From positions 186,001-250,000 of the IMG/VR virus record IMGVR_UViG_3300033182_000980: DNA of 64,000 bases, one strand, 5' to 3'. Positions 4,290 to 36,122 of this stretch are shown here, in pieces. The position numbers and the translations under genes were made by a program. The notes below the pieces were generated by a model, which did not search any database, was not told the DNA's origin, and saw nothing but the letters and a program-made list of their open reading frames with translations. Positions within the stretch are counted from its first letter, which is position 1. Each line of letters begins with the position of its first letter.

Positions 4290-4333
4290 ATATAGATCAT
4301 TGTAACCCCTTAAATATAGATCATTGTAGCCCA
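4290..4333 (+). repeat. Direct repeat ATATAGATCATTGTA x2 (24-nt period) containing class-E motif GTAACCCCTTA (4302-4312)
   Basis: Exact 15-mers at 4290-4304 and 4314-4328, upstream of the ORF at 4360. Confidence 0.75.
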
Positions 4334-9281: not shown

Positions 9282-9608
9282 TCACATACGAGCTTCAAAT
9301 TCCCTACTGCTTTTTCTATATACTTTACCCACCGACATAGTGTCCATTGATTCGTCACTCCATGAATCAAGAGATACTTTAACGGCCTTATTTCCTTTTA
9401 AGGGTACTTCTAAGACGATCTTCCCCCCTCTTGACATTTCAAAAGGTTCAAGGTCAGTATTTACATTTTCGTTAGTTAAAATCGACACTTGATTCTTAAA
9501 AACCCTCATTAGATATGAGTCTTTGAGGTCAACTTTGCTCGCTTGACGCTCTAATCGAGCGATACGAGCTTCAAGATTTCTGATTATTTCTGACGCTGAT
9601 CTTCTCAT
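9282..9608 (-). CDS. Leader-bearing hypothetical protein
   Basis: MRRSASEIIRNLEARIARLERQA; AAGGA RBS. Confidence 0.75.
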   Translation of the reverse strand: MRRSASEIIRNLEARIARLERQASKVDLKDSYLMRVFKNQVSILTNENVNTDLEPFEMSRGGKIVLEVPLKGNKAVKVSLDSWSDESMDTMSVGKVYRKSSREFEARM

Positions 9609-9663: not shown

Positions 9664-9678
9664 ATAAATAAACTACAA
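9664..9678 (-). promoter_or_regulatory. Class-L promoter motif TTGTAGTTTATTTAT
   Basis: Motif match 56 nt upstream of the ATG at 9608. Confidence 0.5.
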
Positions 9679-10165: not shown

Positions 10166-10648
10166 TTACCCAATCCACCTTGTCAGATCGCCCCAGTCTA
10201 ACCAGACTCTCTTTTTCTTAGGGTCAATTTTGATGCCGAGAGCTGAACCTATACTAGTACGATCTCGCTCATCAAAGTTGAATGGGATGCTTATGGTGTT
10301 TGGTCTACCCCCTCCACCAAACGATGGGAAACCTCTTAGTGCCATAAAGTGTTGAGCACCAGCTTGCTTAAACCATTCATCTGCACCAGTGTGAGTTTGT
10401 ACATACCCATAAACAGTCACTGTTCTGCCATTTTTTGGGTTTTCAAAAGTGACATCCACATTATTAAGGCTTTTTACTTCAACATCGACAACTTCAAATA
10501 GACCTGCATCGGTCTTGTAAAGGAGTCTCTCTAACTCTTGGAGGGTTAGTCTATTGTCCTTAAAGATGTCAAAGATACCTGCTTGCTTTTCAAGCTGTGT
10601 AACTCTTGACTCAAGGTCATGGATGATTTCTGATGCAGTTCTTTTCAT
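10166..10648 (-). CDS. Leader-bearing hypothetical protein
   Basis: MKRTASEIIHDLESRVTQLEKQA. Confidence 0.75.
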   Translation of the reverse strand: MKRTASEIIHDLESRVTQLEKQAGIFDIFKDNRLTLQELERLLYKTDAGLFEVVDVEVKSLNNVDVTFENPKNGRTVTVYGYVQTHTGADEWFKQAGAQHFMALRGFPSFGGGGRPNTISIPFNFDERDRTSIGSALGIKIDPKKKRVWLDWGDLTRWIG

Positions 10649-24452: not shown

Positions 24453-25013
24453 TTAGTATTTGAGGTCTATTCCGAGTTTGCCGTCAGAGCCTGGCACTTT
24501 ACAGCAGATACCTACGACAGTGGGGTTAACACCGAGAGCGGCGTTGAGGTTAGCATCAGGATCATTGCATAACAATCCATTCTCGCTGATTTTGAGTGGG
24601 TCATTAAGGTTGTAGGTAATAGGGCCAGCGTTGCGTACTCCGTTTACAGCTAAGGCAGTCGTTTCAAACTCTTTGAAGAGTATTCTAGCACCACCATTAA
24701 CAAGTGTGAGTACGGCCGCACCAGAGGCAGATGCTAATGCCCCTGTGTTTTGATACGAGGTGAAGTTTCGATAAGTAGACTGTCGGGCAGATGCGTAGTT
24801 CTCTGAACCATACAAGACAAATCCTGCCACATATCGCCCATCAGATTTCTCTACTGTGAACTCGGACACATTATCATCATTAGGCACATAATAGACCCAA
24901 GTGCCACCTTTCCAACCTGTCCTACGCATAATAGGACCTGCTGTGCAGGGAGTCTTATCACCATTCTTTAAAACATCAATGTCATCTGTGGTTAGATTTA
25001 GATCAATAGACAT
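24453..25013 (-). CDS. Putative capsid decoration/cement-like structural protein
   Basis: Gly/Asn-rich, beta-rich composition ending G.LGIDLKY; context only. Confidence 0.4.
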   Translation of the reverse strand: MSIDLNLTTDDIDVLKNGDKTPCTAGPIMRRTGWKGGTWVYYVPNDDNVSEFTVEKSDGRYVAGFVLYGSENYASARQSTYRNFTSYQNTGALASASGAAVLTLVNGGARILFKEFETTALAVNGVRNAGPITYNLNDPLKISENGLLCNDPDANLNAALGVNPTVVGICCKVPGSDGKLGIDLKY

Positions 25014-25531
25014 TACGCTTTACCTCCATTCTCTAGCTCACCTTTTTGCTTTTTGTCTTGTAGGACTTGTTTAACCGCCTTTGCCTGTTCTTTTTTAGAG
25101 AGGTGTCTTTCAACGACTCTCTCTACAAGATCTTTTTTCACCTCTACTTTGGTCTTATCTTTGGTGATAGGCTTGGCTTTAGGGATCTCTTCGTGGCTGG
25201 TAGGCACACCTTCGATCTTTTCTTCAGTCTTAACGATAAACTGATTGAGTGTACTCAACTCTTTGCCGCCTGGCTTCTTAATGATTTCTTCGGGAGGGGG
25301 AGGGGCAATGACAGCTTCGCTTTCTATGAGCGTGTCATCTTTCTTCATCTCACCTGACTGGATGGCTTTTTCAACAGTATCTACTTTGTTAGTGATCGCC
25401 TTTGACTCGGCAAGATTTCTAACAGACCTCTTGGTTGGATTATCGAAAAAAGCAGACTCGGCTGATTGTGCTTGTTCCAGCTCTGCTACTCGCCTCATTA
25501 GTGAGGCTATTCTATATCTAAGATCATTCAT
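25013..25531 (-). CDS. Hypothetical protein with a leader-like N-terminus
   Basis: MNDLRYRIASLMRRVAELEQA; AGGAG RBS; class-L motif upstream. Confidence 0.6.
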   Translation of the reverse strand: MNDLRYRIASLMRRVAELEQAQSAESAFFDNPTKRSVRNLAESKAITNKVDTVEKAIQSGEMKKDDTLIESEAVIAPPPPEEIIKKPGGKELSTLNQFIVKTEEKIEGVPTSHEEIPKAKPITKDKTKVEVKKDLVERVVERHLSKKEQAKAVKQVLQDKKQKGELENGGKA

Positions 25532-25566: not shown

Positions 25567-25581
25567 ATAAATAAACTATTA
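25567..25581 (-). promoter_or_regulatory. Class-L motif over a stop codon
   Basis: TAATAGTTTATTTAT, 36 nt upstream of 25531. Confidence 0.6.
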
Positions 25582-26148
25582 CTTTAGCCACCGATACGCT
25601 GTGGCTTCGGAGACTCCGTATAAATCCATGACTTGCTTTACATTCAAACTATAATCGAAGTCATGGGGTTTGCTAGATTTTCTATTTTTGGGCCTCATCT
25701 TAACGCCATATTTTTTAAGCCTATTTCTAAGTGTCTTTGGGTCAACATCGTATTTTTTGCAGATGTCTTTAACCTTTATACTTGAGTCTTGATACATCCT
25801 TATTATGTGTTCCATATCTTCTTCAGGTATTTTTTCTAACGGTTGTTCATATCTTAATGGGACATTAAACTCGTGTATCATGTTATAAACATGGGGCTTA
25901 GATACCCTATGCTTTCTAGCTATCTCGGAGACACCCATACCTCTTTTATAGTCTAAGGCGATGTCAGCACCCTCAAACTTATATGCTTTTGAGGGTTTTA
26001 TTTGAACACCCTCTTCTCTTAGCCTATTGATGATCGTTAGATAACTCACACCATAAAGTTCACCTAGCTTGGTTGAGCTGATGTTATTCCGATAACTACG
26101 AACAATTTGATCTACTGGTAGATCTATATAGCCTCCAACTTTTTTCAT
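25579..26148 (-). CDS. Tandem helix-turn-helix DNA-binding protein (about four HTH units)
   Basis: STKLGELYGVSYLTIINRL; VSEIARKHRVSKPHVYNMI; VKDICKKYDVDPKTLRNRL; VKQVMDLYGVSEATAYRWL. Confidence 0.8.
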   Translation of the reverse strand: MKKVGGYIDLPVDQIVRSYRNNISSTKLGELYGVSYLTIINRLREEGVQIKPSKAYKFEGADIALDYKRGMGVSEIARKHRVSKPHVYNMIHEFNVPLRYEQPLEKIPEEDMEHIIRMYQDSSIKVKDICKKYDVDPKTLRNRLKKYGVKMRPKNRKSSKPHDFDYSLNVKQVMDLYGVSEATAYRWLK

Positions 26149-26474
26149 GTCTGATCCCCCTCTCTATTTGCATAGCGTGGGGAGTCAAAGCTACTATGGA
26201 TAAACTCATCAAAGGGAACACTCCATTGATATTCAGAGTAGTATTCCTCGACTAGATGTACCGTATTCCCCCTCGACCACACCACAGTATCACCAAACTC
26301 ATCAGCCCAAACAGGGCAAGAGCAGATATACTTAGTATCGGACTCTTTTAGGAGTCCTCTGATTGTGTCCATAAAGTCTTTGGGTTCAACCCACCCTATT
26401 TCTTTACCATGTCCGAAAGTGCCTTTTGGCTGATACTCGCTGATGTGATAGCATTCGTCTTGGTCATAAGTCAT
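26145..26474 (-). CDS. Hypothetical protein
   Basis: ATGA overlaps with both neighbours. Confidence 0.6.
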   Translation of the reverse strand: MTYDQDECYHISEYQPKGTFGHGKEIGWVEPKDFMDTIRGLLKESDTKYICSCPVWADEFGDTVVWSRGNTVHLVEEYYSEYQWSVPFDEFIHSSFDSPRYANREGDQT

Positions 26475-27580
26475 ACTCGATACCTCTCGATCTCTTGGGT
26501 TGGGGCTAGGTTAGGGTCTTGGGTGAACTCATGCCACAGCTTGATTTTGACCCATGTTTTGGTTGCATCTCCTGCTTTATAGGTTCGGGTGCGATCCTCG
26601 ATGTCGATGATGTCATCGTCTATTACTTGGTGCTTTTCTACATAGGCTAAGGTTACCCATCGCTCTCTGTAGTGGCTACGCACATTACGAGGGGTGTAGT
26701 GTTCGGGTGCTGTGTAGCTCCTAGCATCAGTCTCTTTTGGGTCGCTATCTACATGGCGAAAGTAGGTAGTGCGAAACTCCCTGTACTTCTGCTTGAACCT
26801 TGCACCTTTTGGCTTGCCTTTGCCTTTAGACTTGATCTTTGTTCGCCCACAGGGGAAGCGATTGTCTTGGTGGACGCTTGTTTCCTTGACGAACTGACCC
26901 TCATGGATCATCTCAAGTGCTGTTAGTCCAAAGGCGGCTACTTTAGCGTAGCCCATCTTTGGTGAGATCTCACCTCGCTGTTCGTGAGCTACAAACTCAC
27001 CAAACGAAAGCTCCTTATTCAAAGGGAAAGCATAAAAGTATCCGTTGGTAGCGTGGACATAGCACCAATACTCTGGCATAGCATCTGCGTACTTTTCTTG
27101 AGAAAGTTCAGACACATAGCCATAATAACCTTTCTCTACCCACGATGGTGTTTTCACTAGAAGGATGCCTTTCACCCTTTCAAGAGTTTCATTTTCACCT
27201 GTTCTGTCGGGGTTTATAGGAAAGCCCCAACTTGAGAGGTCAATCCATACCATTCCTTTATCAAGGTGTGGGATGGTGATCTCCTCTTTTAGAGGTGTGT
27301 TCTCAAGATACTCTTTGACGCTACGATCAAGAGCGAGGTCAGCAGGTCGCTTTTTGAGGTAGTTTAAGGCACAGTACAAGTCCATTAACGGATTAGTTGC
27401 CCCCTCAACAAACTCATAAAAGTCATCAGAGTGCTTTTTAAACCCTGTGATTGATAGAGCGTACTCGGCTTGATCTTTGGTTGTACCCTTGTGCTTTAGG
27501 GCTTCATTGAGCACACCGTGGGGGATCGTCTGCTTGAGATGTGCAAGGTATGAACCTCGTGGTAGCTTGTGTGAACGCAT
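26471..27580 (-). CDS. Hypothetical phage protein with a C-terminal VR(S/G)H(Y/W)R-type motif
   Basis: Strong AAAGGAG RBS; PRNVRSHYRERW...WVK. Confidence 0.7.
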   Translation of the reverse strand: MRSHKLPRGSYLAHLKQTIPHGVLNEALKHKGTTKDQAEYALSITGFKKHSDDFYEFVEGATNPLMDLYCALNYLKKRPADLALDRSVKEYLENTPLKEEITIPHLDKGMVWIDLSSWGFPINPDRTGENETLERVKGILLVKTPSWVEKGYYGYVSELSQEKYADAMPEYWCYVHATNGYFYAFPLNKELSFGEFVAHEQRGEISPKMGYAKVAAFGLTALEMIHEGQFVKETSVHQDNRFPCGRTKIKSKGKGKPKGARFKQKYREFRTTYFRHVDSDPKETDARSYTAPEHYTPRNVRSHYRERWVTLAYVEKHQVIDDDIIDIEDRTRTYKAGDATKTWVKIKLWHEFTQDPNLAPTQEIERYRV

Positions 27581-27609
27581 ATTGGTTCTCCTTTCAGAGT
27601 GGCTATGGT

Positions 27610-27620
27610 TAAGGGGTTAC
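27610..27620 (-). promoter_or_regulatory. Class-E motif GTAACCCCTTA
   Basis: Exact 11-mer, 30 nt upstream of 27580. Confidence 0.65.
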
Positions 27621-27838
27621 AGTCTTTTGTGCCTCTGCTTATATGACTTTAGGTCAAAGCCTTCATCTCTTAGGGTTCGCCTAATCTTCTCAAGAGCCTT
27701 AGCTACAACCCGATCACCTTTAGGGTAGTAATCTCCATTGGCTTCAAGCCATGCAGAGACTCGGCTCTTGTCTTTAAAGGAGCAAATGACCACCCTAGCT
27801 AACTCGCTAGACTCGTGGCTGATCTGTTCGGCTGTCAT
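27617..27838 (-). CDS. Small hypothetical protein
   Basis: 73-aa ORF coupled (ATGA) to the upstream gene. Confidence 0.55.
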   Translation of the reverse strand: MTAEQISHESSELARVVICSFKDKSRVSAWLEANGDYYPKGDRVVAKALEKIRRTLRDEGFDLKSYKQRHKRL

Positions 27839-28143
27839 ACACCAACCATCCTGTACTCAACAGCCTCACCGCACTTAGGACACTTACCATCTGGTGTAGG
27901 CTCACCTCCATCATGGAACTGATGCCATTGACAGATGTGAGGCTCAACCGACTTGATGTGCTTACAAGGGCTTTTATCGTAGTCCTCTCCCTTCTGATAG
28001 AAGAAGGCCGGACAAGTACAAGTCCATACTCCAAGACGCTCTAAGAGCTGTACCTTGTAGGCCTTACCTTTGCTTCCCTGTACCTCATAGGTCTTAAAGG
28101 GAGCTTGGCATTGTGCGTATGGGTGGTAAGTTAAGTCGGGCAT
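27835..28143 (-). CDS. SWIM zinc-finger protein with a C-terminal zinc ribbon
   Basis: V.GSKG..Y.V...WTCTCP...CKH plus C..H...CPKCG; AAAGGAG RBS. Confidence 0.8.
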   Translation of the reverse strand: MPDLTYHPYAQCQAPFKTYEVQGSKGKAYKVQLLERLGVWTCTCPAFFYQKGEDYDKSPCKHIKSVEPHICQWHQFHDGGEPTPDGKCPKCGEAVEYRMVGV

Positions 28144-28180
28144 TGGTGTTCTCCTTTAAGGATTATTATATGACAGAGAC

Positions 28181-28801
28181 TTAGGCGAGTCGGATGTTTG
28201 CCCTCACATCCCAATACGCCTTAGACACCTCCATTTGAGCGTTGTACTCGTCCTCACTCATATCGGTGAGCGTACCTCCATCAAGACCCTTATAGTTAGC
28301 CTCTAGTGCTGTGGGGGTGATGGGTGGAGCGTCCATGCACTCGTCCTCTGAAGCGTTGATGCTGACCAACTGCCAACTAGTAGGGTCAAGCGTGGAGAGG
28401 TCTACATCTTCACCCTGTGCGAGAGCGACATCGTTGTAAAACACGAGATCGACCGTCTTGGCGAGTGGCTTAGAGTCTCGGATCACCTCACGATAAGGTC
28501 GGGGATCTTCACCCTCCACACGAGAACGGAAGCCTTCAAGGACCTCCTCACCCTCACGAACAAGAGTGATTGCAGAGAAGAAGCGATCCCTCACTTGCTC
28601 ATCTGTAAGACGAGCGAGGATGACTCGACCACCCTGGTCGTAGCTTGCAGGTCGGTAGCCTTCGGACAGGTTTTTTGACTCGACCTCATGCAAGAGAAGG
28701 GCGACCTCTTCAAAGGTCATGGAGCTGTGAGAGAAAGGACTCTCAGCAGTTTGTCGTTGGCAGAAGGGGTTTACGGTTGCGTTGTTGATTGTGATGTTCA
28801 T
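28181..28801 (-). CDS. Hypothetical protein
   Basis: AAGGGAG RBS; class-E motif upstream. Confidence 0.7.
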   Translation of the reverse strand: MNITINNATVNPFCQRQTAESPFSHSSMTFEEVALLLHEVESKNLSEGYRPASYDQGGRVILARLTDEQVRDRFFSAITLVREGEEVLEGFRSRVEGEDPRPYREVIRDSKPLAKTVDLVFYNDVALAQGEDVDLSTLDPTSWQLVSINASEDECMDAPPITPTALEANYKGLDGGTLTDMSEDEYNAQMEVSKAYWDVRANIRLA

Positions 28802-28846
28802 CTTGTCTCCCTTTCGTGGAGTGGTTGATTGATGCTTTGTAATAGA

Positions 28847-28857
28847 TAAGGGGTTAC
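28847..28857 (-). promoter_or_regulatory. Class-E motif GTAACCCCTTA
   Basis: Exact 11-mer, 46 nt upstream of 28801. Confidence 0.65.
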
Positions 28858-28909
28858 GCTTTACCTAACGACTCGACAGAGAGCTTTCGGACAGCGAACC
28901 TAAGTTTTT

Positions 28910-29089
28910 TTATCCGAGATCGTGTGCGAGGTCATTCGCCTCAATCTCTGCGTGGATCTCCTCGTGGTCAAAGATGACCACACGCTCTGCTTTGAGCTTG
29001 GCTCGCATCTCTTTGACGGTGTAGACCTCATTGAGATGGAAGAGAAAGAGTCGGCAGAGTGCATTGATCTCGTTCATTGTGTATGTCAT
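28910..29089 (-). CDS. 59-aa hypothetical protein (below the ORF-track cutoff)
   Basis: MTYTMNEINALCRLFLFHLNEVYTVKEMRAKLKAERVVIFDHEEIHAEIEANDLAHDLG; AAAGGAG RBS; class-E motif upstream. Confidence 0.7.
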   Translation of the reverse strand: MTYTMNEINALCRLFLFHLNEVYTVKEMRAKLKAERVVIFDHEEIHAEIEANDLAHDLG

Positions 29090-29152
29090 GTGTGTCTCCT
29101 TTGGGAGTTGAGGTTGGGGTTGGTCATCAGCCCCTCGATACTATGGTATAAA

Positions 29153-29226
29153 TAAGGGGTTACCGATTAGCTTTTGTGAGCCAAATCAAACACTTACGCA
29201 AGTTTGTGGTGGGTCGTAACCCCTTA
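29153..29226. promoter_or_regulatory. Divergent pair of class-E motifs (29153-29163 minus; 29216-29226 plus)
   Basis: Two exact GTAACCCCTTA 11-mers pointing outward. Confidence 0.65.
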
Positions 29227-29290
29227 TCTATTGTTTCTTATCGGGGCAGACGATGCCTCACTAACCCTCACTCCCGAACGGAGAACAGAC

Positions 29291-29434
29291 ATGACAGTTT
29301 CACAAATCATCCTCGCACTCATCGCACTCATCGGAACTGGCTTCTTCATGGTCGTCATGTACGCCGCATGGCTGGGTCTGATGGAGGACACAGCGAGGCT
29401 TGTGATTAAGGTTCGCAACCACACTAAGAGGTAA
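29291..29434 (+). CDS. 47-aa single-pass membrane protein (start corrected)
   Basis: GGAGA RBS; MTVSQIILALIALIGTGFFMVVMYAAWLG hydrophobic helix, basic tail. Confidence 0.65.
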   Translation: MTVSQIILALIALIGTGFFMVVMYAAWLGLMEDTARLVIKVRNHTKR

Positions 29435-29437
29435 AGC

Positions 29438-29448
29438 GTAACCCCTTA
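29438..29448 (+). promoter_or_regulatory. Class-E motif GTAACCCCTTA
   Basis: Exact 11-mer, 60 nt upstream of 29508. Confidence 0.65.
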
Positions 29449-29507
29449 ATCATATAACTGTGTAGGTATGATGCCTACACCTTCCCCACTCTAACAAGGA
29501 GATCAAT

Positions 29508-30209
29508 ATGAGTGCCGAGACAATCCTTTACATAATCCTATCGCTCTTAAGAGCAGACAACGCAACCAACCTCACCGACCCTGTGGTTCATAACCACTTG
29601 GTCGAGGTAAGTGAGGCTATCGAGGCTCACGCTTCACGAACAGTACCTGCCGAGCGTCTTATAAGCCTTGCGTATAATGAGAGTCGCTTTGGGTATCGCC
29701 ATGTTCAGCGTGGCACTTTCCCAAAGAGCAGTTGGAATGCCTGTGGCATCTATCAGCAAGTCCCTCGCTACAGTCGTATCGAGACGACCTGTGATCGACT
29801 AGGGACAGATGTTGACCATGCCACAGAGGTAGCTGTTGCTTACCTTGACTACATGATTGATCGCTGGTCAATCAGAGGCTCACGCAATATGGACACTCGT
29901 ATGTGCCACTACTACAGTGGCAACCGATGTGATGCCGAAGCTAGAGCTTACTCGAAGCGACATCGTAGGGTTCGTTTAAAGGCTCGTAAGCTACGCTCTA
30001 AGGCTCGCAGAGCTTCGACCCCTCGCCCTACTACTCGCAGAGCTACAAACGCTCGTAGGATCACAAAAGAGAGCCTTTTCGCAGGTGTCTCACCTCGCAG
30101 AAAGACTCTACAAGAGATGACTCGTGAGGAGTGGGTACACGCTCTCCGACATGAGACGAATGAAGCTCGTAGACGAGAGCTTGCTCTCCCACCCTTAACC
30201 TTAGACTAA
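29508..30209 (+). CDS. Lytic transglycosylase (SLT/lysozyme-like) domain protein with an Arg-rich tail
   Basis: LAYNESRF (catalytic ES), ACGIYQ, YYSG; hydrophobic N-terminus. Confidence 0.7.
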   Translation: MSAETILYIILSLLRADNATNLTDPVVHNHLVEVSEAIEAHASRTVPAERLISLAYNESRFGYRHVQRGTFPKSSWNACGIYQQVPRYSRIETTCDRLGTDVDHATEVAVAYLDYMIDRWSIRGSRNMDTRMCHYYSGNRCDAEARAYSKRHRRVRLKARKLRSKARRASTPRPTTRRATNARRITKESLFAGVSPRRKTLQEMTREEWVHALRHETNEARRRELALPPLTLD

Positions 30210-30219
30210 GGGGGTGGGT

Positions 30220-30771
30220 ATGAGGTTCATGCAAGCATCTGACATATACGAGGTCTTGATGACCTACACTTTGCCCTTTGCGTTGAAGGAAAGCGACCTA
30301 GAGGAAGATGAGGTTTTAGACTATATACATGACTTTTACATAGACCTCCAAGACAATGAGGTGCAATGGGTAGACGGTGTTCGTCAAGGTACTTACGACC
30401 TTGAGAAGTTGAGTCCTAAGACCATGAAGCCAATCATCACTCGGTTCTTCTTTCAGTATGTAACGAGAGCCAAGTACACAGAGGGTAGGTGGGTAGATCG
30501 GAGACTATTGGGTCGAAGGACTCATGCGGAGGTGCTCAATGGATCACAAGCACCACATCATCTTCCACCACCAACGAGCTATGAGATGCACCTAAGAACA
30601 GACTGTGAGCTGTTCTTCAACTCGCTATCTCAAGATGAAGCTCTGGTGTTAAATCAGCTTGTTCGGGGAGAATCAGTAAAAACCCAAATGGAAACCATAG
30701 GTAAATCTTATAAGAGATACCGTAGGGTACTTAAAAGCCTACAGGCTAAAGCAAGAGAGCAGTTAATGTAA
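30220..30771 (+). CDS. Divergent ECF-like sigma factor
   Basis: Region-2-like helices, then region-4-like LSQDEALVLNQLVRGESVKTQMETIGKS...VLKSL. Confidence 0.5.
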   Translation: MRFMQASDIYEVLMTYTLPFALKESDLEEDEVLDYIHDFYIDLQDNEVQWVDGVRQGTYDLEKLSPKTMKPIITRFFFQYVTRAKYTEGRWVDRRLLGRRTHAEVLNGSQAPHHLPPPTSYEMHLRTDCELFFNSLSQDEALVLNQLVRGESVKTQMETIGKSYKRYRRVLKSLQAKAREQLM

Positions 30772-30782
30772 GGAGAATAACT

Positions 30783-31220
30783 ATGAAAACAATAACTAAG
30801 AAACAGGACGGCAAGCGTTGCATGAAGAAGATGAATCAATGGTATGGGTGCAATAAAAGCACAGCAGTAAACTGGTTTTCGAGGTGGGACGAGTTTACGA
30901 ATGACCTTATGCTTGAGCTTGGTTTTGTAAGAACAAAGTGTAGCCCGATTGAAAAGATCCCACGAAAAGATTGGGAACAAGAGCTGACTTACAGCCACAA
31001 TGTTCTTGGTGAATACACATTCCACCTAAAGAGGAAGCGTAGGCAAGAGGGTGGGCGTATCTATGTGTCTTGTGGTGATAAGGAAGTTATGGTAGATACT
31101 GTTAGTTATATCGCTTACCCCATAATGTGTCGGACAACAGTGGGTGATAAAATCTTGGAGATCATCCGTACTAACTGGGAGTCTCAAAACCTTGAGTCAA
31201 AGCCTAACGAAGAAGATTAA
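30783..31220 (+). CDS. Hypothetical protein, paralogue A
   Basis: W.C.NK.T..WF...ELGF...GG.I...RT.VGD.I...IR..W shared with 31234..31605. Confidence 0.65.
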   Translation: MKTITKKQDGKRCMKKMNQWYGCNKSTAVNWFSRWDEFTNDLMLELGFVRTKCSPIEKIPRKDWEQELTYSHNVLGEYTFHLKRKRRQEGGRIYVSCGDKEVMVDTVSYIAYPIMCRTTVGDKILEIIRTNWESQNLESKPNEED

Positions 31221-31233
31221 AGGCAAGCGAGTA

Positions 31234-31605
31234 ATGAGGAGTCTCCCTGTGTGGAGATGCGTGAATAAGACGACACCATTTAGCTGGTTCGAGAAATATG
31301 ATAGATTTCTCACAGAGCTTGGGTACGAGTTGGGGTTTACCTCCATAGGTGCAACGGAGATAGAGGAAATCACCGACAGCTATTACATTACGATGACTTT
31401 TCGCCACAGCTCTGATAAGTATTTTTCTTTTACGCTTATGAGGGGCAAACAGTTTTTCGGTGGTGGCATTAGTCTTAGGTTAGACAACCATCAAACAGAG
31501 TTGCTTGTAACAGCGATCCCTCATAACAACAAATTTGTAGAGTCAAGGACAGTGGTTGGGGACTGGATTATAAATCAGATCCGAGATCATTGGGATCTAG
31601 TTTAA
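31234..31605 (+). CDS. Hypothetical protein, paralogue B (start corrected to MRSLPV)
   Basis: Same shared motifs as paralogue A. Confidence 0.65.
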   Translation: MRSLPVWRCVNKTTPFSWFEKYDRFLTELGYELGFTSIGATEIEEITDSYYITMTFRHSSDKYFSFTLMRGKQFFGGGISLRLDNHQTELLVTAIPHNNKFVESRTVVGDWIINQIRDHWDLV

Positions 31606-32178
31606 GCCAAACTTCTTTCTCGACACAGGTAGAAATCCAAAGCCTGGTGAGATGGAGTCTCCTGTTGAGATTTGATTTCCACCCTCATCAATCTTCATAT
31701 TGAATGTAGCTTTCTCCACAGTCCCTGGAGAGAAGGTAGCCACTTCTTCAATGTGATCAGCCCATGCGAGAAGGTAGCGACTACCTTCAAATGGTTCGCC
31801 TTTGAAGTCGGTTCGTAGCCCATAAGCGAATACGGGTATTTCTAGCTCATCGACAATCTTTGTTAGACCGAGAACTTGCTCACGATTAAAGAACTGAGCT
31901 TCGTCAACAAAGACGACTTGGATTCCCTCTGATCCAACATCTTTTCGGAAGATGACCTCTTGCATGATGAGGCTGAAAGGATCTTCCCCTGTTCCGACAG
32001 TGGTAGCCTTTTGTTCAAAGCCGATTCGTGATGCGACCTTAGATTTCCCATCACGATCTTGAGCCACTTCTGGTACAAGGATACGAAACTCGATGTCTCT
32101 TTCTTTGCATGAGTGTGCCCTCATTATGAGGTTAGCAGATTTACCTGCGTTGACGGTTGAATAGATAAAGTTTAACAA
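31597..32178 (-). CDS. tdk: Thymidine kinase (TK1/type II family)
   Basis: YSTVNAGKS P-loop, VFVDEAQF, AYGLRTDF.GEPFEGS..LLAWAD. Confidence 0.93.
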   Translation of the reverse strand: MLNFIYSTVNAGKSANLIMRAHSCKERDIEFRILVPEVAQDRDGKSKVASRIGFEQKATTVGTGEDPFSLIMQEVIFRKDVGSEGIQVVFVDEAQFFNREQVLGLTKIVDELEIPVFAYGLRTDFKGEPFEGSRYLLAWADHIEEVATFSPGTVEKATFNMKIDEGGNQISTGDSISPGFGFLPVSRKKFGLN

Positions 32179-32777
32179 GGCAGTAAGTCCTCTCGTTCAA
32201 GTAAGTAAGCGACCTTTTCACGCACCTGCTTAACATACTTATTAACGAGTCTGATCTCCCAACCGTACTCACGACTGATGTGGGCTTTCTTTAATCCGTT
32301 CATAAGTGCATCATATACCTTGAGCAGAACTCCAGAGAAGTTAGCTCTGATTTCTTGTAAGAAGATAGCGTCCGAGGGGTCTTCCTCATAAGACGCATTA
32401 TATGAGCAAGCCACATCATCTTCCACACCAGTGACAAATCTATCACTGATGCGATTATACTTATTCATGTAGTTCATGGTGATGCAATCAACGACCATCA
32501 CAATATAAGTAGACATTGCAGACTTCTCTGGATCAAAGGGGCATGATCCTCTATTTCGGATAAGGATGCCTTTGTAGACCTCTTGTAGCACCTCTTCGGT
32601 GTCCACACCTGTTTTCATCAACTTCTGCCCTTGTCTTTTATAGAACAGGTTTTTGATGTCTTCTTTGTGTTTTTCTATATCAATACCTAGTGTCTTTACT
32701 TTGAAAGAATAGGAAAAAATAGTCGGTAGCCCCTCTTGCCACTTAAATTGTGGCGAGAGGTCAGTATAATCATACAT
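32172..32777 (-). CDS. ECF-type (sigma-70 family) RNA polymerase sigma factor
   Basis: EEVLQEVY...FDPEKSAMSTYI...NY (region 2) and a C-terminal HTH region 4. Confidence 0.8.
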   Translation of the reverse strand: MYDYTDLSPQFKWQEGLPTIFSYSFKVKTLGIDIEKHKEDIKNLFYKRQGQKLMKTGVDTEEVLQEVYKGILIRNRGSCPFDPEKSAMSTYIVMVVDCITMNYMNKYNRISDRFVTGVEDDVACSYNASYEEDPSDAIFLQEIRANFSGVLLKVYDALMNGLKKAHISREYGWEIRLVNKYVKQVREKVAYLLEREDLLPC

Positions 32778-32835
32778 TAAACCCCCTTTGCGTCTGGCTG
32801 GTGGATGTATTCTTCATGTAGAAAGGTTGTTGTCA

Positions 32836-33822
32836 ATGAAAAAGACATCTCAAATAGAAATCTTACATTGGGCCAAGTCTAAGCACAATGTAGACACTAA
32901 ATATATACATAAATCTCTTTCTGACAAGGATTTTAATAATCTTTGCTTACTTTTGCAGAAAAATAAGTACATTGGCTCGGTGGTAGACACTAAAGAGATG
33001 GTAAGTGAATACATCAAGGAACATGGCATACAGTACATACCTCAATCCTTTAAAGGGGTAGATGTAGACCTTACTTTCTTCTTTAATACCCATCCCCTTC
33101 AAGAAGATGAGTCGATTGAGGTCGATCTGTACCACATACTTTTACAATCGTGGTGCAAGCCAAGTAGAACGAACTACAGGACACTTAAGAAGCATCTTAA
33201 AGAGCTAGGGTACGATTTAAAGACTACATCTCCTACCTACTCTAGTCGCACAGAAAACTGTGTCGTGTCTCTCAAAGCCAACTACCCTCTAAGTTTGCCA
33301 AAGACTTTGGTAAGGTGTACCAAAGCTATCAAATGGTACACCGAGATACACAGTTGGCTGTATTTGGACTCGCCTAAAATTGAGTTGAGAGGTGAACTAT
33401 ATACTTTGAGGAGCTTAGGAGATAGGTGGGAAGCCTACTTTACGAAGCGTTTTATAGATCTTTTTGATATGTCGGAAGCACCTTATCTACATAAGCACCC
33501 TCAAGTGAGGGGAGCTTATGAGAATGCTCCTCCAGTATTGGCATTGTGTGAGCTGACCATTCGAGATGTTTTCAAGCCGACTAAGTTAAGAGACTGGATA
33601 GATACAGCTCTACGAACTTCTTACCTTGAGACTTACGGTAAGGAGTCCGAGGTGGACGAGATCTTTTTGGAAACCGTTTATGAGGAGGTGTGTGGCAAAC
33701 TCTCTAAGACTATGATAAAAGGCAACCCGATAAAAAGTTTCGATGTTGTTGGGGGTTGGATTTCTATAATAGTGATTGCTTACCTCAATGACATTCTGAA
33801 TGAATACCGGTCACTACTATAA
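32836..33822 (+). CDS. Hypothetical protein (start set at MKKTSQ)
   Basis: Long ORF with AAAGG RBS; no motif recognised. Confidence 0.65.
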   Translation: MKKTSQIEILHWAKSKHNVDTKYIHKSLSDKDFNNLCLLLQKNKYIGSVVDTKEMVSEYIKEHGIQYIPQSFKGVDVDLTFFFNTHPLQEDESIEVDLYHILLQSWCKPSRTNYRTLKKHLKELGYDLKTTSPTYSSRTENCVVSLKANYPLSLPKTLVRCTKAIKWYTEIHSWLYLDSPKIELRGELYTLRSLGDRWEAYFTKRFIDLFDMSEAPYLHKHPQVRGAYENAPPVLALCELTIRDVFKPTKLRDWIDTALRTSYLETYGKESEVDEIFLETVYEEVCGKLSKTMIKGNPIKSFDVVGGWISIIVIAYLNDILNEYRSLL

Positions 33823-33830
33823 GGAACAAG

Positions 33831-34628
33831 ATGAATATACTTTTAATTTTAGGACTCTCTTTTCAATGTATGTTGAACCATATGTCGTATGCGTCCTCTA
33901 TACATATAGAGCCTGGTTGGAAGATGATCCAGTCAAGACCTACCTCCGAGAGACAATTAAGGCGATTTCTAAGAGAGCTGACAAAAGACGATGATGAATA
34001 TGTTGACCCACGCATCCTCGCATTGTCTTGGATTGAGTCTCGGATCAGACCTCGTATAAATAGAGGAGATCGTGGCAAAGCCTGTGGGATGTTCCAAATC
34101 CATGCTCGTTATTCTTACCCTATGTTCAGAAGGCGAAGGGGCTTCAATGGATGGGTTGAAAGTGAAGAACAACAAACAATCAGCCGTGAATGTAGGCGAT
34201 TAGAATCTATAAGGTACTCTGTAAACACTATGGAGCGATACCTCACAAAAATGGATGAGAGAGGTTTACATCCTTGTCATCATAATAGTGGCTTCTATGG
34301 TCGATGTAATACATGGTATAAACAACGAGTCGATTATTGGACTGCTTACTTTGAGATCGCCAACTTCATGTGCAATGAAAGGACAATAGAGATTATGGCT
34401 ATGATGAGAACAGGAAACCCTATCCCGACAGCACCAGCTACAATGATGCAAGGTTATCTTGATGCGATGGGTGATAGAGAACCACAAAACGAAGATGACC
34501 CCACTTATAAGGCTGGGTACGACCTCGCAAAGCTCGTTCAAGAGGGTAAGGCTCAAGCTCCCTCTTGGGCGACTGAAAGCTCAAACAACACCTCGACAGC
34601 AAGCGAGGAAACTGAGCGTGAAGGATGA
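33831..34628 (+). CDS. Secreted lytic transglycosylase (SLT-like) domain protein
   Basis: Signal-like N-terminus; ILALSWIESR, ACGMFQI, HHNSG. Confidence 0.7.
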   Translation: MNILLILGLSFQCMLNHMSYASSIHIEPGWKMIQSRPTSERQLRRFLRELTKDDDEYVDPRILALSWIESRIRPRINRGDRGKACGMFQIHARYSYPMFRRRRGFNGWVESEEQQTISRECRRLESIRYSVNTMERYLTKMDERGLHPCHHNSGFYGRCNTWYKQRVDYWTAYFEIANFMCNERTIEIMAMMRTGNPIPTAPATMMQGYLDAMGDREPQNEDDPTYKAGYDLAKLVQEGKAQAPSWATESSNNTSTASEETEREG

Positions 34629-35289
34629 TTGGATAAGACAAGGTTTGATAGGGGCGAACCCTATACACCTACCTTATCTCGTATCAAGAGGGGTGGGCGA
34701 AGGTTGTCGGGTAGATTTCTATTCGTGGCAACCCCACCCCAATGTTCAATGTCCTAAGTTCAAAGCTAACTTCGGACAGTCGGGTGAGCGTATAAAGGAC
34801 TCACTTATCATCCCTATCACATCACCTCGTGGAGAAATCATAGGGATGGAGACTCGTCAGATTAAAGAAGATGGCTCTAAAAAAGTCCATCAGTACCGAA
34901 CCCTTAATGCTCAATGGAATCCCTACGCACTTGGTGCTGAAGAAGGCTTTAAAGCTCTATGGGATCAAGGAGACTTATGGGTAGTCGAGGGGATCTTCGA
35001 CAAGGTGGCTCTGGATAAAGTCATACCTAGATGTGATGCTGTGATCTCCACACTAAGAGCGGGCATGGACGCTAACACTATGGACATGATTGAACGCTTC
35101 TATACACCTGCCTCAACCATATACATCTGTTATGACAATGACGAGACAGGTCAGAAGAAATCAGCTTGGCTTCAGCGTGAGATGAAGAAGCGAGGTATGC
35201 GATCTGTTGTGTGGAGGTATCGAGGGAAAGATCCTAACGATGTCTGGACACAAGGTGGGGATCAAGCTCTAAGGAGAATGTTCCTTTAG
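34618..35289 (+). CDS. DNA primase, TOPRIM catalytic core (DnaG-like, short)
   Basis: YLVSRG, LIIPI..PRG.IIG..TR, VVEGIFD, YDNDETG, KDPND; GTG start at 34618 with GAGGA RBS. Confidence 0.85.
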   Translation: MKDDWIRQGLIGANPIHLPYLVSRGVGEGCRVDFYSWQPHPNVQCPKFKANFGQSGERIKDSLIIPITSPRGEIIGMETRQIKEDGSKKVHQYRTLNAQWNPYALGAEEGFKALWDQGDLWVVEGIFDKVALDKVIPRCDAVISTLRAGMDANTMDMIERFYTPASTIYICYDNDETGQKKSAWLQREMKKRGMRSVVWRYRGKDPNDVWTQGGDQALRRMFL

Positions 35290-35720
35290 AGGCTAGAAGC
35301 CCAAGTCTCTCTGATGAACTTAGGTAGCTTGAACCAATGCTCGCTATTAGGCTCTCTAAGGATATGAGCTTGACCGATGACCCCTTTAAGTCCGTCCGAT
35401 TTCTTACCCATGATGCGTATCTCATACGCTTGCTCATGGACGAAAGCAAAGGTCTGTCCAGGATTGGGGGTGGTGTAGGGGCAACCATCCCAACCATGAA
35501 AACCTGTCGGGCATGGTACAGCGATGACGATCTTACGAGAGTCAATGTGTGTGAATAAGATAGGGCTATCCCATCTAGTTTTTCCACACCCGAAGGTCAT
35601 CTCTCCGAGCATATCCATGAGGATTGCATCTTTGCAATCTATGGGTGCGTTTTTAAAGTCATTCTTAGCCGAAGCTGAAAATAGGGTATGTCCGTGTTCG
35701 TCTTTAGTCAAGTAGCTCAT
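35286..35720 (-). CDS. Hypothetical protein
   Basis: 144-aa ORF convergent with the primase gene. Confidence 0.55.
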   Translation of the reverse strand: MSYLTKDEHGHTLFSASAKNDFKNAPIDCKDAILMDMLGEMTFGCGKTRWDSPILFTHIDSRKIVIAVPCPTGFHGWDGCPYTTPNPGQTFAFVHEQAYEIRIMGKKSDGLKGVIGQAHILREPNSEHWFKLPKFIRETWASSL

Positions 35721-35723
35721 GTA

Positions 35724-35734
35724 GTAACCCCTTA
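35724..35734 (+). promoter_or_regulatory. Class-E motif GTAACCCCTTA
   Basis: Exact 11-mer, 44 nt upstream of 35778. Confidence 0.65.
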
Positions 35735-35777
35735 TCTATTAGATACTGTTGATAGTTTATATGAAAGGGGATGTACT

Positions 35778-36122
35778 ATGGCTAAAAAGAAGGTTTGGAG
35801 AAGAAGGTTGAAAGCATGGGAAAGAAAGTTTTACTGCTCTAAGCACGATAGTGTTATATCGTGCGAGATGTGTCATGGAGTGTTTCATGGCACAGTAAAA
35901 GAGCTTGCTGGTAAGCTCAAGGATCACGAGCTAAGAGGGAAGCTCATAGGGGATCACTTTGTTTTTGATGTGGTCGAGTATGGCCACAGAGATGGATCTG
36001 TGACTTGGGCTAGAACCAAGTCATATGTGGGAGGACGACAAGAGACAGGTCGTTGGGTAGAGATAGATACTGATATGTGGTTCAGAGAAGAGATTGCTCA
36101 AAAGAGTGAGTGGATCTACTAA
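35778..36122 (+). CDS. Hypothetical protein with a Cys/His cluster (start corrected to MAKKKV)
   Basis: AAGGGG RBS; C..H...C..CHG. Confidence 0.6.
   Translation: MAKKKVWRRRLKAWERKFYCSKHDSVISCEMCHGVFHGTVKELAGKLKDHELRGKLIGDHFVFDVVEYGHRDGSVTWARTKSYVGGRQETGRWVEIDTDMWFREEIAQKSEWIY

What the first reader, a model, noticed from the sequence alone, without database searches (positions are those of the whole stretch)
27610..35734. Two ECF-like sigma factors and two distinct promoter classes: a decodable transcription cascade
Seen: the exact 11-mer GTAACCCCTTA (extended about GTAACCCCTTAWNYAT) occurs seven times (4302, 27610, 28847, 29153, 29216, 29438, 35724). It always points into a gene 30-65 nt away, and these genes are non-structural. 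The different class-L motif precedes structural and cargo genes. The window encodes a clear ECF-like sigma (32172..32777) and a more divergent one (30220..30771), the latter in an operon behind a class-E motif. Neither motif has a -35/-10 sigma70 form. Inference: each motif is read by a dedicated phage or host alternative sigma factor.
Basis: partly seen in the sequence, partly recalled or inferred. Interest (0 to 1): 0.6.

Follow-up and report, generated by a model that had tools for sequence, protein, structure and literature searches.

The report
Early promoter and sigma-like genes, jumbo phage
The repeated 11-mer is the core of a real, highly conserved early-gene promoter of an uncultivated 376-kb marine phage that has no RNA polymerase of its own but carries three sigma-like genes, a known kind of phage strategy; which sigma reads which promoter is still open.

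Summary
GTAACCCCTTA occurs 7 times in the window (0.01 expected) and 62 times in the 375,691-bp phage genome. Nearly all copies are intergenic and point at a start codon 28-73 nt away.

Both ORFs are sigma-like. P0001 (32172-32777) is supported by a family profile and by fold. P0002 (30220-30771) is supported only by fold and by a modelled contact with the RNAP beta-prime clamp helices.

The interpretation needs four corrections.
- There are three promoter classes, not two: E, M (TCATATAA, before replication genes and tRNAs) and L (TAGTTTnTTTATA, late).
- There is a third sigma-like gene outside the window, and P0002 is its lineage-specific paralogue.
- Relatives with the identical E motif lack P0002 at the syntenic locus, so P0002 is probably not the E reader.
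- Short leaders place the conserved block at about -24 to -7, with no conserved -35 element. It is therefore not a canonical ECF promoter.

No phage RNA polymerase was found. Sigma70-type promoters are depleted genome-wide, yet two sit upstream of P0001.

Best model: host sigma70 makes P0001, P0001 drives E, and E supplies P0002. The sigma3 family would then drive the later classes. The assignments are inferred, not shown. This is a new member of a known kind.

The parts
4302..4318 (+). Class-E promoter block (GTAACCCCTTA plus AATATA); precedes the 149-aa gene at 4360-4809
27604..27620 (-). Class-E promoter block. It precedes the 369-aa gene at 26471-27580 with a leader of only 29 nt. An M-type TCATATAA lies 18 nt upstream at 27639-27646
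28841..28857 (-). Class-E promoter block; precedes the 206-aa gene at 28181-28801 and the small genes after it
29147..29163 (-). Class-E promoter block; precedes the 59-aa gene at 28910-29089. It is divergent from the copy at 29216
29216..29232 (+). Class-E promoter block; precedes a 47-aa hydrophobic peptide gene at 29291-29434
29438..29458 (+). Composite E/M promoter (GTAACCCCTTA fused to ATCATATAAC), followed by a hairpin. It heads the operon SLT-like, P0002, o145, o153
35724..35740 (+). Class-E promoter block; precedes the 104-aa gene at 35808-36122. An M-type TCATATAA on the other strand (35757-35764) faces the 144-aa gene at 35286-35720
29508..30209 (+). First gene of the E-driven operon: 233 aa, with weak similarity to SLT-type transglycosylases
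   Evidence: PF01464 at E=0.006, below its cut-off; phrog_38211 at E=0.001
30220..30771 (+). P0002: a divergent two-domain sigma-like protein of 183 aa (a GTG at 30214 is an alternative start). It is a lineage-specific paralogue of the 289-aa sigma3 gene at genome 253065-253934
   Evidence: No sequence-family hit. AF2 model with pLDDT 74. Top PDB matches are sigma factors, best phiEco32 gp36 (9m7y_F, E=8.7e-3). Sigma4 domain at Z 9.3, rmsd 1.9 A over 62 aa. Modelled contact with beta-prime clamp helices scores 0.69 against 0.01 for the best control. Paralogy:
30783..31605 (+). Two further genes of the operon (145 and 153 aa, overlapping frames, starts uncertain). Function is unknown. Both are conserved in relatives, including those that lack P0002
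32172..32777 (-). P0001: a sigma70-family two-domain sigma of 201 aa, followed by thymidine kinase (31597-32178). It is present across a wide set of jumbo-phage contigs
   Evidence: The family profile hits PDB 3mzy sigma-H at E=3.2e-8 over sigma2-sigma4. Of 28 homologues, 17 match Pfam Sigma70_r2 (best E=4.4e-5). AF2 model with pLDDT 81; the top Foldseek hits are ECF sigmas
32809..32927 (-). Two sigma70-type promoter matches upstream of P0001: TTGTCA-16-TATATT at 32927-32900 and TTGACA-16-AAGAAT at 32836-32809. Each matches 10 of 12 positions
28166..28173 (-). Class-M motif TCATATAA, 22 nt upstream of the 102-aa gene at 27835-28143
32398..32405 (-). Class-M motif inside the P0001 coding sequence, upstream of thymidine kinase. 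It may be an internal promoter or a chance match
25567..25578 (-). Class-L motif TAGTTTATTTAT, 35 nt upstream of the 172-aa gene at 25013-25531. Other window copies are at 9664, 11410 and 11816, all on the minus strand

Best explanation
The window lies in an uncultivated marine jumbo phage of about 376 kb, in which I found no RNA polymerase. It appears to redirect the host core enzyme with its own sigma factors.

GTAACCCCTTA-TCTATA is the invariant core of the early-class promoter, with 62 copies. It sits at about -24 to -7 and has no conserved -35 element. Transcripts would start in the weakly conserved tAGTGT and often begin with a stem-loop.

Two other classes exist. M (TCATATAA) precedes replication and recombination genes and tRNAs. 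L (TAGTTTnTTTATA) precedes structural genes.

The most likely order of events is as follows. Host sigma70 holoenzyme transcribes the P0001 sigma gene from one of the very few sigma70-type promoters left in the genome. P0001 holoenzyme then reads E, and possibly the related -10-only M sites. E operons supply P0002 here, and the 289-aa sigma3 in a relative. The sigma3 family then directs the later classes.

Shown: the motif statistics, its orientation, the sigma-like nature of the proteins, and the absence of P0002 from the syntenic locus of the relatives examined.

Inferred: that the motifs are promoters, where the start site lies, and every sigma-to-motif assignment.
For: Motif counts, orientation and intergenic placement.

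Three classes with coherent gene content:
- E precedes small unknown genes, an SNF2 helicase and the P0002 operon.
- M precedes PolA, RecD-like and other helicases, a UvsX-like recombinase, an exonuclease and tRNAs.
- L precedes a baseplate gene and a 23-member family with a shared N-terminal peptide.

No phage RNA polymerase:
- Six-frame Pfam searches for PF00562 and PF00623 found nothing, and their controls rang in 14 of 14 genomes.
- Pfam or PHROGs scans of nearly every protein above 600 aa found none.
- No catalytic-motif matches.

Sigma-like proteins:
- P0001 is a sigma70-family protein.
- P0002 has a sigma-like fold.
- P0002 is modelled onto beta-prime residues 274-298, the clamp helices. 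The score is 0.69 and the best of 3 controls is 0.01. That mark was reached by 51 of 78 solved complexes and 2 of 108 mismatched pairs. The runs agree in at least 42% of contacts, and the partner's pLDDT is at least 57.

Sigma70-type promoters:
- Genome-wide there are 28, against 71-89 in Markov simulations. Of the 8 that lie upstream of genes, 2 precede P0001.
- 6 of 10 P0001 orthologues have a match of 10/12 or better within 220 nt, against 6 of 424 genes overall.

Cascade order: sigma3-family genes lie behind E-type promoters in two lineages, P0002 here and sigma3 in G003.

Support from relatives and the literature:
- In relative G004 the equivalent class is a bipartite motif with a fixed 13-nt gap and canonical -35/-10 spacing, as expected for a sigma70-family reader.
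Against: - No transcription start data.
- An almost invariant, contiguous 17-bp block is more typical of single-subunit RNAP promoters than of sigma promoters.
- The predicted DNA-reading helix of P0001 is identical in lineages whose E block differs strongly: G000, G001, G002, L207 and L209. The L core is equally invariant. Read simply, this co-variation pairs P0001 with L and the faster-evolving sigma3 with E. Sigma3 is 30-32% identical between G000 and G003/G004, against 52-57% for P0001.
- The sigma70-type matches upstream of P0001 lie partly inside the divergent ORF, so their conservation could be due to coding. They are absent by my rule in 4 of 10 orthologues, and under 10/12 in one of the other six.
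- Divergent RNA polymerases of the N4, phiKZ or crAss type can escape Pfam.
Confidence: 0.5

Rival explanations
1. The assignment is swapped. The fast-evolving sigma3 family (the 289-aa protein, with P0002 as an extra copy) reads the fast-evolving E block and activates its own operon, as ECF sigmas typically do. The conserved P0001 reads the conserved L or M motif, as T4 gp55 reads late promoters. The first sigma3 molecules would come from weak host transcription or be delivered with the DNA.
For: - The E block changes from lineage to lineage while P0001's recognition helix does not.
- The L core ATTTATA is conserved in G000-G004, L207 and L209.
- Sigma3 diverges about twice as fast as P0001.
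- Sigma3-family genes sit behind E-type promoters here and in G003.
- P0002 is one of the fastest-evolving genes of its neighbourhood.
Against: - There is no source for the first sigma3 molecules.
- None of the three sigma-like proteins carries the N-terminal peptide shared by the 23 probable virion cargo proteins.
- In the lineage of L034/L221, sigma3 is only 69-76% identical while the E motif is identical.
- In G000, sigma3 itself has no E motif pointing at it.
Confidence: 0.2
2. E is read by a phage-encoded RNA polymerase that sequence methods cannot recognise. It would be a single-subunit or virion-delivered enzyme, and the sigma-like proteins would serve only later classes.
For: - The block is a contiguous 17-18 bp, nearly invariant in 62 copies, and ends in CTATA(G). 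This resembles T7, SP6 and T3 promoters in form; that comparison is from my own knowledge.
- Many proteins of 600-3000 aa have no family assignment.
- The six-frame PF00940 search is uninformative, because its controls rang nowhere.
Against: - Direct Pfam scans of the mid-size and large proteins found no RNA_pol family.
- No ORF of 550 aa or more has T7-type motif A or C signatures, and none has a beta-prime-type NADFDGD.
- The base after the block is not a conserved G: G21, A18, T17 and C6 of 62.
- Relative G004 uses a -35/-10-spaced bipartite motif for the same class.
- The genome carries three sigma-like genes.
Confidence: 0.12
3. The invariant upstream half (GTAACCCCTTA) is the binding site of a separate phage DNA-binding protein, an activator or a shut-off repressor. 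It would be laid on a minimal -10-only promoter of the M type (TCTATA or TCATATAA). Under this reading the motif is an operator or activator box rather than the part the sigma reads.
For: - Seven E copies fuse the same upstream half to an exact M motif, shifted by one base.
- The upstream half turns over between lineages while a TATA(A)G-like element persists.
- The genome encodes several multi-HTH proteins, among them window 25579-26148.
- The neighbour o328 (32836-33822), divergent from P0001, evolves as fast as the motif.
- T4 MotA/AsiA is a precedent; that is from my own knowledge.
Against: - No candidate binder was identified. o328 has no detectable family.
- The upstream half abuts the -10-like element at about -24 to -13, where activators of sigma70-family holoenzymes rarely sit.
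- This reading overlaps the main explanation rather than excluding it.
Confidence: 0.12
4. A host alternative sigma factor reads E.
For: E contains TGTAAC, which resembles the -35 of some Bacillus ECF sigmas; that comparison is from my own knowledge.
Against: - The block differs strongly between closely related phages, which a conserved host factor would not permit.
- Leader lengths put TGTAAC at about -24, not at -35.
Confidence: 0.03

Closest known systems
phiEco32 gp36 sigma and its middle/late promoters (also phage 7-11)
   Same: It is a small, very divergent two-domain phage sigma that binds host core RNAP through an acidic helix on the clamp helices. It reads a single conserved block around -10 with no consensus -35 (PMC12276001). 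gp36 (9m7y_F) is the best Foldseek match of the P0002 model.
   Different: The gp36 consensus is a short AATGTA centred at -11.5. E is a 17-bp invariant block reaching to about -24. phiEco32 is a 77-kb phage whose early genes use sigma70 promoters. Here sigma70-type promoters are depleted and the early class itself is phage-specific. No gp79-like partner was identified.
Bacillus phage SPO1 sigma cascade (gp28, then gp33/gp34)
   Same: The proposed logic is the same. Host sigma transcribes a first phage sigma gene. That sigma drives a class that includes the next sigma gene, and this gives three temporal classes (my own knowledge; PMC13401047 abstract).
   Different: In SPO1 most early genes are read by host sigmaA. 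Here only a handful of sigma70-type sites exist. The order of the cascade is inferred here, not measured.
Rak2-like jumbo phages CBB and GAP32
   Same: These are jumbo phages of more than 340 kb without their own RNAP. They have a sigma70-family gene plus a gp55-like sigma and three bioinformatically predicted promoter classes: early before small genes, a second class before DNA-synthesis genes, and an AT-rich late motif before structural genes (PMC5259590).
   Different: The early class of CBB is RpoD-like with an UP element, and its late motif is the T4-like ATAAATA. No sequence relationship to those phages was found: a megablast of the region against 50,697 phage records gave no match.
T4 gp55 and late promoters (TATAAATA)
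   Same: Class L is an AT-rich single block about 35-50 nt upstream of late genes, conserved across distant relatives.
   Different: The L sequence is TAGTTTnTTTATA. Read on the coding strand it is not TATAAATA. No gp55, gp33 or clamp homologue was tested or found. The sigma-like proteins here have a sigma4-like domain, which gp55 lacks (my own knowledge).
ECF (group 4) sigma factors and their promoters
   Same: P0001 and P0002 have the size and the two-domain sigma2 + sigma4 layout. The best structural matches are M. tuberculosis SigH, SigK and SigL, E. coli sigmaE and B. subtilis SigW.
   Different: No anti-sigma partner was recognised. P0001 is not behind its own target motif. E lacks the AAC(-35)/CGT(-10) bipartite layout. 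All curated sigma models score below their cut-offs.

Membership tests
sigma70 family, two-domain (group 4 / ECF-like): P0001 | Sigma2 domain (regions 2.1-2.4) recognisable by sequence | tested here: met
   The profile of 28 homologues hits PDB 3mzy sigma-H at E=3.2e-8, covering positions 68-204. Of 28 members, 17 match Pfam Sigma70_r2, best E=4.4e-5. The single sequence scores only E=3.4e-3 to TIGR02937, below its cut-off.
sigma70 family, two-domain (group 4 / ECF-like): P0001 | C-terminal sigma4 helix-turn-helix domain | tested here: met
   The alignment to 3mzy runs through its sigma4. The AF2 model (pLDDT 81) has ECF sigmas among nearly all of its top Foldseek hits, with probabilities of 0.97-1.00.
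sigma70 family, two-domain (group 4 / ECF-like): P0001 | Binds core RNAP and confers promoter-specific initiation | not testable with these tools
   This needs in vitro transcription or pull-down.
sigma70 family, two-domain: P0002 | Sigma2-like N-terminal domain that binds the beta-prime clamp helices | tested here: inconclusive
   There is no sequence-level hit. Two-domain structural alignments to SigH and sigmaE give Z of about 8.5, which the tool's own notes rate as middling for helical proteins. The predicted complex puts residues 28-44 on E. coli beta-prime 274-298, with a score of 0.69 against 0.01 for the best control. That mark was reached by 51 of 78 solved and 2 of 108 mismatched pairs. 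The runs agree in at least 42% of contacts, and the partner's pLDDT is at least 57. This supports binding but is a model.
sigma70 family, two-domain: P0002 | Sigma4-like C-terminal HTH domain | tested here: met
   Residues 122-183 align to M. tuberculosis SigK sigma4 at Z 9.3, rmsd 1.9 A over 62 aa. SigD, SigL and SigW sigma4 give Z 8.3-8.7. LuxR-type response-regulator HTH domains also score Z of about 7.5, so the fold alone is not specific.
ECF sigma regulatory module | Sigma gene autoregulated from its own target promoter and co-transcribed with an anti-sigma factor | tested here: inconclusive
   P0002 lies behind an E promoter. However, E functions in relatives that lack P0002 at that locus. 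The co-transcribed o145 and o153 have no family hit. P0001 has no E, M or L motif upstream.
ECF-type bipartite promoter (-35 AAC / -10 CGT, 16-17 bp spacer) | Two conserved elements at about -35 and -10 with a variable spacer | tested here: not met
   There is no conservation upstream of the block. In six promoters the Shine-Dalgarno sequence starts at motif index 26-29, so the start site is at or before about index 25. TGTAAC therefore lies near -24, and tAGTGT lies at the start site rather than at -10.
Single-subunit (T7-type) RNAP promoter | Contiguous block of about 17-23 bp ending at the start site, plus a cognate single-subunit RNAP gene | tested here: not met
   A contiguous invariant block is present. 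No RNA_pol family hit was found in the proteins scanned, and no motif A or C signature. The base after the block is not conserved. The six-frame PF00940 search was uninformative.
Multisubunit jumbo-phage RNAP system (phiKZ/AR9 type) | Split beta/beta-prime-like genes | tested here: not met
   PF00562 and PF00623 found nothing in six frames, with controls ringing in 14 of 14 genomes. There is no NADFDGD-like motif. Very divergent subunits could still escape.

The most novel reading that the evidence does not exclude
Promoter specificity for the early class is not set by a sigma alone. The invariant -24 to -13 half of E (GTAACCCCTTA), which is replaced wholesale between sister lineages while P0001's DNA-reading helices stay identical, would be read by a separate, fast-evolving phage subunit. 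One candidate is the unassigned 328-aa protein encoded divergently from P0001. This would be a MotA-like appropriation module paired with a phage sigma instead of host sigma70. It would let each phage lineage keep a private early promoter code in a genome purged of host promoters.
Probability: 0.12. Interest if true: 0.7.

Novelty: new member of a known kind. Interest (0 to 1): 0.42.

Why it matters
Phage sigma cascades are textbook, and reviews already note that RNAP-lacking jumbo phages carry sigma homologues. Almost none of these systems has a defined promoter code, however.

This case offers a clean, testable one in an abundant, uncultivated marine phage clade:
- 62 near-identical early promoters;
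- two further promoter classes with coherent gene content;
- three sigma-like genes;
- a genome depleted of host-type promoters;
- natural variants in sister lineages that change the early block while one sigma's DNA-reading helices stay fixed.

That set would allow a direct in vitro decoding experiment and a study of how promoter and reader co-evolve. The 17-bp block and its reader might also be useful as an orthogonal expression part. None of this overturns current understanding.

Tried and rejected
- **ECF-type bipartite reading of E** (TGTAAC, spacer, GTGT). It looked attractive after comparing L207 and L209. I rejected it because six E promoters place the Shine-Dalgarno sequence at motif index 26-29.
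- **P0002 as the E reader.** Co-variation suggested it: P0002 is 48-79% identical where the neighbours are 70-97%. I rejected it as a necessary reader. L034 (identical E motif), G001 and G002 have the syntenic locus without P0002. IMG/VR holds no homologue, and the whole family has only 8 hits among 1.84 billion representatives.
- **A phage RNA polymerase.** Six-frame Pfam searches, Pfam and PHROGs scans of large proteins, and catalytic-motif searches all came back empty. The 3049-aa protein next to the E-rich region has a Gly/Val/Ser/Thr-rich, fibre-like composition and no hits.
- **Near-identity search** of the region against 50,697 phage records: no match.
- **Literature search for the 11-mer:** only chance hits in unrelated papers.
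- **Profile-profile comparison of the two sigma families:** only the C-terminal HTH aligns, at 5% probability.
- **PDB profile searches with the P0002 and sigma3 alignments:** nothing significant.
- **Atlas look-alikes for o328:** nothing above the chance level.
- **De novo motif discovery in G003 and G004.** It found lineage-specific early-type motifs. Their upstream elements sit at different distances from the -10-like element, so no single geometry could be derived.

No alternative genetic code was used.

Full report
**Setting.** The window is bases 186001-250000 of a 375,691-bp IMG/VR virus record that CheckV rates as complete. GC content is about 44%. Homologues of its proteins come from marine and other aquatic metagenomes, including TARA samples. 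A megablast of the region against 50,697 deposited phage genomes found nothing. This is an uncultivated jumbo phage with strong Shine-Dalgarno sites.

**The observation.**
Shuffles give 0.01 expected.
- The whole genome holds 62 exact copies, and the reversed control pattern holds none.
- Aligned on the motif, the conserved block is longer: a preceding T, the 11-mer, then TCTATA with A and T nearly invariant. After about four free bases comes a weaker tAGTGT.
- On my own rough gene calls (424 genes, 87% coding), 54 of 62 copies are wholly intergenic.
- All 62 face a same-strand start. For 49 of them the start is 28-73 nt away.
- About thirty copies are packed into 334-363 kb, in front of small genes. 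That is the usual look of an early region.
- A stem-loop of -5 kcal/mol or better follows 39 of 62 copies.

**Other motif classes.** K-mer enrichment in upstream regions recovered two further motifs.
- L is TAGTTTnTTTAT(a), preceded by TT. It has 41 copies. It lies before a baseplate gene, before unassigned large genes, and before many members of a 23-gene family that share an N-terminal peptide.
- M is (aaa)TCATATAA, with 55 copies, 37 of them within 120 nt upstream of a start. It lies before family-A DNA polymerase, a RecD-like helicase, another DNA helicase, a UvsX-like recombinase, an SbcC-like exonuclease, a homing endonuclease and tRNA genes.
- E lies before small unknown genes, an SNF2 helicase and the P0002 operon.
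- Seven E copies are composites. The E upstream half is fused to an exact M motif, shifted by one base. The copy at 29438 that heads the P0002 operon is one of them.

The phage therefore has three classes with early, middle and late gene content, not two.

**Where transcription must start.** In six E promoters the leader is so short that the Shine-Dalgarno sequence begins 26-29 nt after the first G of the motif. The window copy at 27610 is one of them. The mRNA must contain that site, so the start lies at or before about index 25. The last position a -10-like element can occupy is TATCTATA, at indices 9-16. The invariant block then spans roughly -24 to -7, and tAGTGT is the start region. Nothing is conserved where a -35 would lie. 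This excludes the classical ECF layout and a sigma70 layout. Sigma70-type matches in the region are no more frequent than chance.

**The two sigma candidates.**
- *P0001 (32172-32777, 201 aa).* On its own it has only sub-threshold hits. It belongs to a large family (82 clusters). The family profile matches the Fusobacterium sigma-H structure 3mzy at E=3.2e-8 across sigma2 and sigma4. Of 28 family members, 17 touch Pfam Sigma70_r2. Its AF2 model (pLDDT 81) finds ECF sigmas in essentially all top Foldseek rows.
- *P0002 (30220-30771, 183 aa).* It has no sequence-level hit anywhere, and its family is tiny: 19 clusters in one search, 8 hits among 1.84 billion representatives in another. Its AF2 model (pLDDT 74) also finds sigma factors first. 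The best is phiEco32 gp36 in 9m7y (E=8.7e-3). The C-terminal 62 residues superpose on SigK sigma4 at Z 9.3 and 1.9 A.
- *Complex prediction for P0002.* The model places the acidic helix of P0002 (residues 28-44) on E. coli beta-prime 274-298, the clamp helices where sigma2 binds. The score is 0.69 and the best of three controls is 0.01. That mark was reached by 51 of 78 solved complexes and 2 of 108 mismatched pairs. The runs agree in at least 42% of contacts, and the partner's pLDDT is at least 57. This supports a sigma-like mode of binding but does not show it.

**A third sigma-like gene, and what P0002 is.** A search of the genome with the P0002 profile found a 289-aa paralogue at genome 253065-253934, outside the window (E=7e-9). 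I call it sigma3. It shares the N-terminal core with P0002 and ends in an HTH-like segment. Sigma3 homologues occur in the close relatives and, at 30-32% identity, in the distant relatives G003 and G004. P0002 proper occurs in neither of those two. P0002 is therefore a lineage-specific extra copy of sigma3. Several other proteins that matched sigma4 models are multi-HTH DNA-binding proteins, not sigmas.

**No phage RNA polymerase found.**
- Six-frame searches for the beta and beta-prime core domains were empty, with good controls.
- The T7-type search was empty, but its controls were uninformative.
- I therefore scanned nearly all proteins above 600 aa directly with Pfam or PHROGs and looked for catalytic signatures. 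Nothing was found.
- The giant ORFs of the window (37306-63406) follow a baseplate gene with an L promoter and have no family. The 3049-aa protein looks like a fibre.

This fits the review statement that most jumbo phages lack their own RNAP and often carry sigma homologues presumed to work with host RNAP (PMC13282480).

**Who reads E? Evidence from relatives.** The locus SLT-like, [P0002], o145, o153, TK, P0001, o328, o265, primase is syntenic in many contigs. Three results matter.
1. L034 carries the identical E motif, and G001 carries the variant GTGACCC(C/T)TTATCTAT together with M and L. Both have the locus without P0002, as does G002. P0002 is therefore not needed for E, M or L there. 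These are contig fragments, so a copy elsewhere cannot be excluded.
2. The E block changes step by step across lineages.
   - It is the same in L213.
   - It has GTG for GTA in L210 and G001.
   - It reads GTAACCCCTTGTTTATA in L211.
   - It reads GGTAACCATCATATTCTATAAGTGTA in L209.
   - It reads ACTACCTCTCAAAATCTTATAGGTGTA in L207.
   - It reads ACACCCCTTAAATnCTATAAG in G002.
   - In G003 it is a C-tract, 9-10 nt, then TTGATAAG.
   - In G004 it is TTATCCCAAG, exactly 13 nt, then TTATTAG.

   A TATA(A)G-like element and a C-rich upstream element persist, but their spacing varies. A host factor could hardly follow such changes.
3. The predicted recognition helix of P0001 is identical in G000, G001, G002, L207 and L209. 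Sigma3 evolves about twice as fast as P0001. The L core ATTTATA is conserved everywhere.

The third result favours pairing P0001 with a conserved element: the shared TATA(A)G-like -10, or L. The variable upstream half of E would then be read by something else.

**Temporal logic.**
- Sigma70-type promoters (10 of 12 or better) are strongly depleted: 28 in the genome against 71-89 in five Markov simulations.
- Only eight lie upstream of genes, and two of those precede P0001.
- Six of ten P0001 orthologues have such a match within 220 nt, including different sequences in the more distant G002 and G003. Among all genes here the figure is 6 of 424.
- Sigma3-family genes lie behind E-type promoters in two lineages.

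The simplest order is host sigma70, then P0001, then E, then the sigma3 family, then the later classes. The composite E/M promoters hint that E and M share the same -10 reader. I rate this model at about one half. The swapped assignment, an unrecognised polymerase and a separate binder for the upstream half take most of the rest.

**Comparison with known systems.** In function this resembles the SPO1 cascade and the predicted three-class scheme of CBB and GAP32. In protein and promoter form it resembles phiEco32 gp36, which reads a single block near -10. It differs in four ways:
- a 17-bp invariant early block reaching to -24;
- the near-absence of host-type promoters;
- a duplicated sigma3 lineage;
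- rapid lineage-specific turnover of the early block.

It is a new member of a known kind.

**Limits.** Gene calls are my own heuristic. The relatives are mostly contig fragments. Every sigma-to-promoter link is an inference. No referred steps arose.

Noticed in passing
window 5203-5916(-), 9282-9608(-), 10166-10648(-); 20 more across the genome: 23 genes begin with a near-identical N-terminal peptide of about 23 aa (MRRSASEVIRNLE.RIARLERQA), followed by unrelated C-termini of 108-292 aa. Most lie behind L promoters. The peptide looks like a capsid-targeting or propeptide signal with LxE-type protease sites, so these are probably virion cargo proteins. The family also exists in relative G004.
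   Followed up: partly
whole genome (G000): Sigma70-type promoter matches (10/12 or better, 16-18 nt spacer) number 28, against 71-89 in first-order Markov simulations. This suggests selection against host-type promoters.
   Followed up: partly
window 37306-63406(-): Five giant co-directional ORFs (1774, 2060, 1084, 1902 and 1089 aa) have no PHROGs hit; only the 1084-aa one was also scanned against Pfam, likewise without a hit. They lie downstream of a baseplate-like gene that has an L promoter just beyond the window end (genome 250487). They are probably tail or baseplate appendages.
   Followed up: partly
window 25579-26148(-): A 189-aa protein made of three to four helix-turn-helix repeats (HTH_23 at E=1e-18). 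Two similar multi-HTH proteins lie elsewhere, at genome 27172-27603 and about 147122-147775. They are candidate DNA-binding regulators.
   Followed up: partly
window 32836-33822(+): A 328-aa protein of unknown family is transcribed divergently from P0001. It evolves much faster than its neighbours: 51-57% identity where TK and primase are 74-89%. Its divergence tracks the lineage changes of the E block.
   Followed up: partly
window 29291-29434(+): A 47-aa hydrophobic peptide gene has its own E promoter. It lies between two divergent E promoters only 53 nt apart.
   Followed up: no
genome 86726-89101 (L013:10726-13101): A ribonucleotide reductase large-subunit gene is interrupted by an intein with a LAGLIDADG domain.
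   Followed up: no
genome 257901-260660 (L019:12901-15660): A 919-aa protein has poly(A) polymerase / CCA-adding head and RNA-binding domains. The genome also has a tRNA cluster near 176-178 kb, preceded by M motifs.
   Followed up: no
relative G004 (L107-L121), e.g. 38298-60195: About 20-40 copies of a strictly spaced bipartite motif: A-rich tract, TTATCCCAAG, 13 nt, TTATTAGtgGGG. They lie upstream of small genes. This is the early-class equivalent in a phage whose P0001 is 52% identical. The same genome is also rich in ATTGGATAAG-type repeats (more than 250 copies of the 8-mer core) of unknown meaning.
   Followed up: partly
genome 42275-42841 (L011:4275-4841): A 188-aa protein has a sigma4-type HTH at its N-terminus (Pfam Sigma70_r4 at E=6.6e-6, above its cut-off) and no sigma2 domain. 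It is not a canonical sigma, but it may be a regulator or an anti-sigma-like decoy.
   Followed up: no
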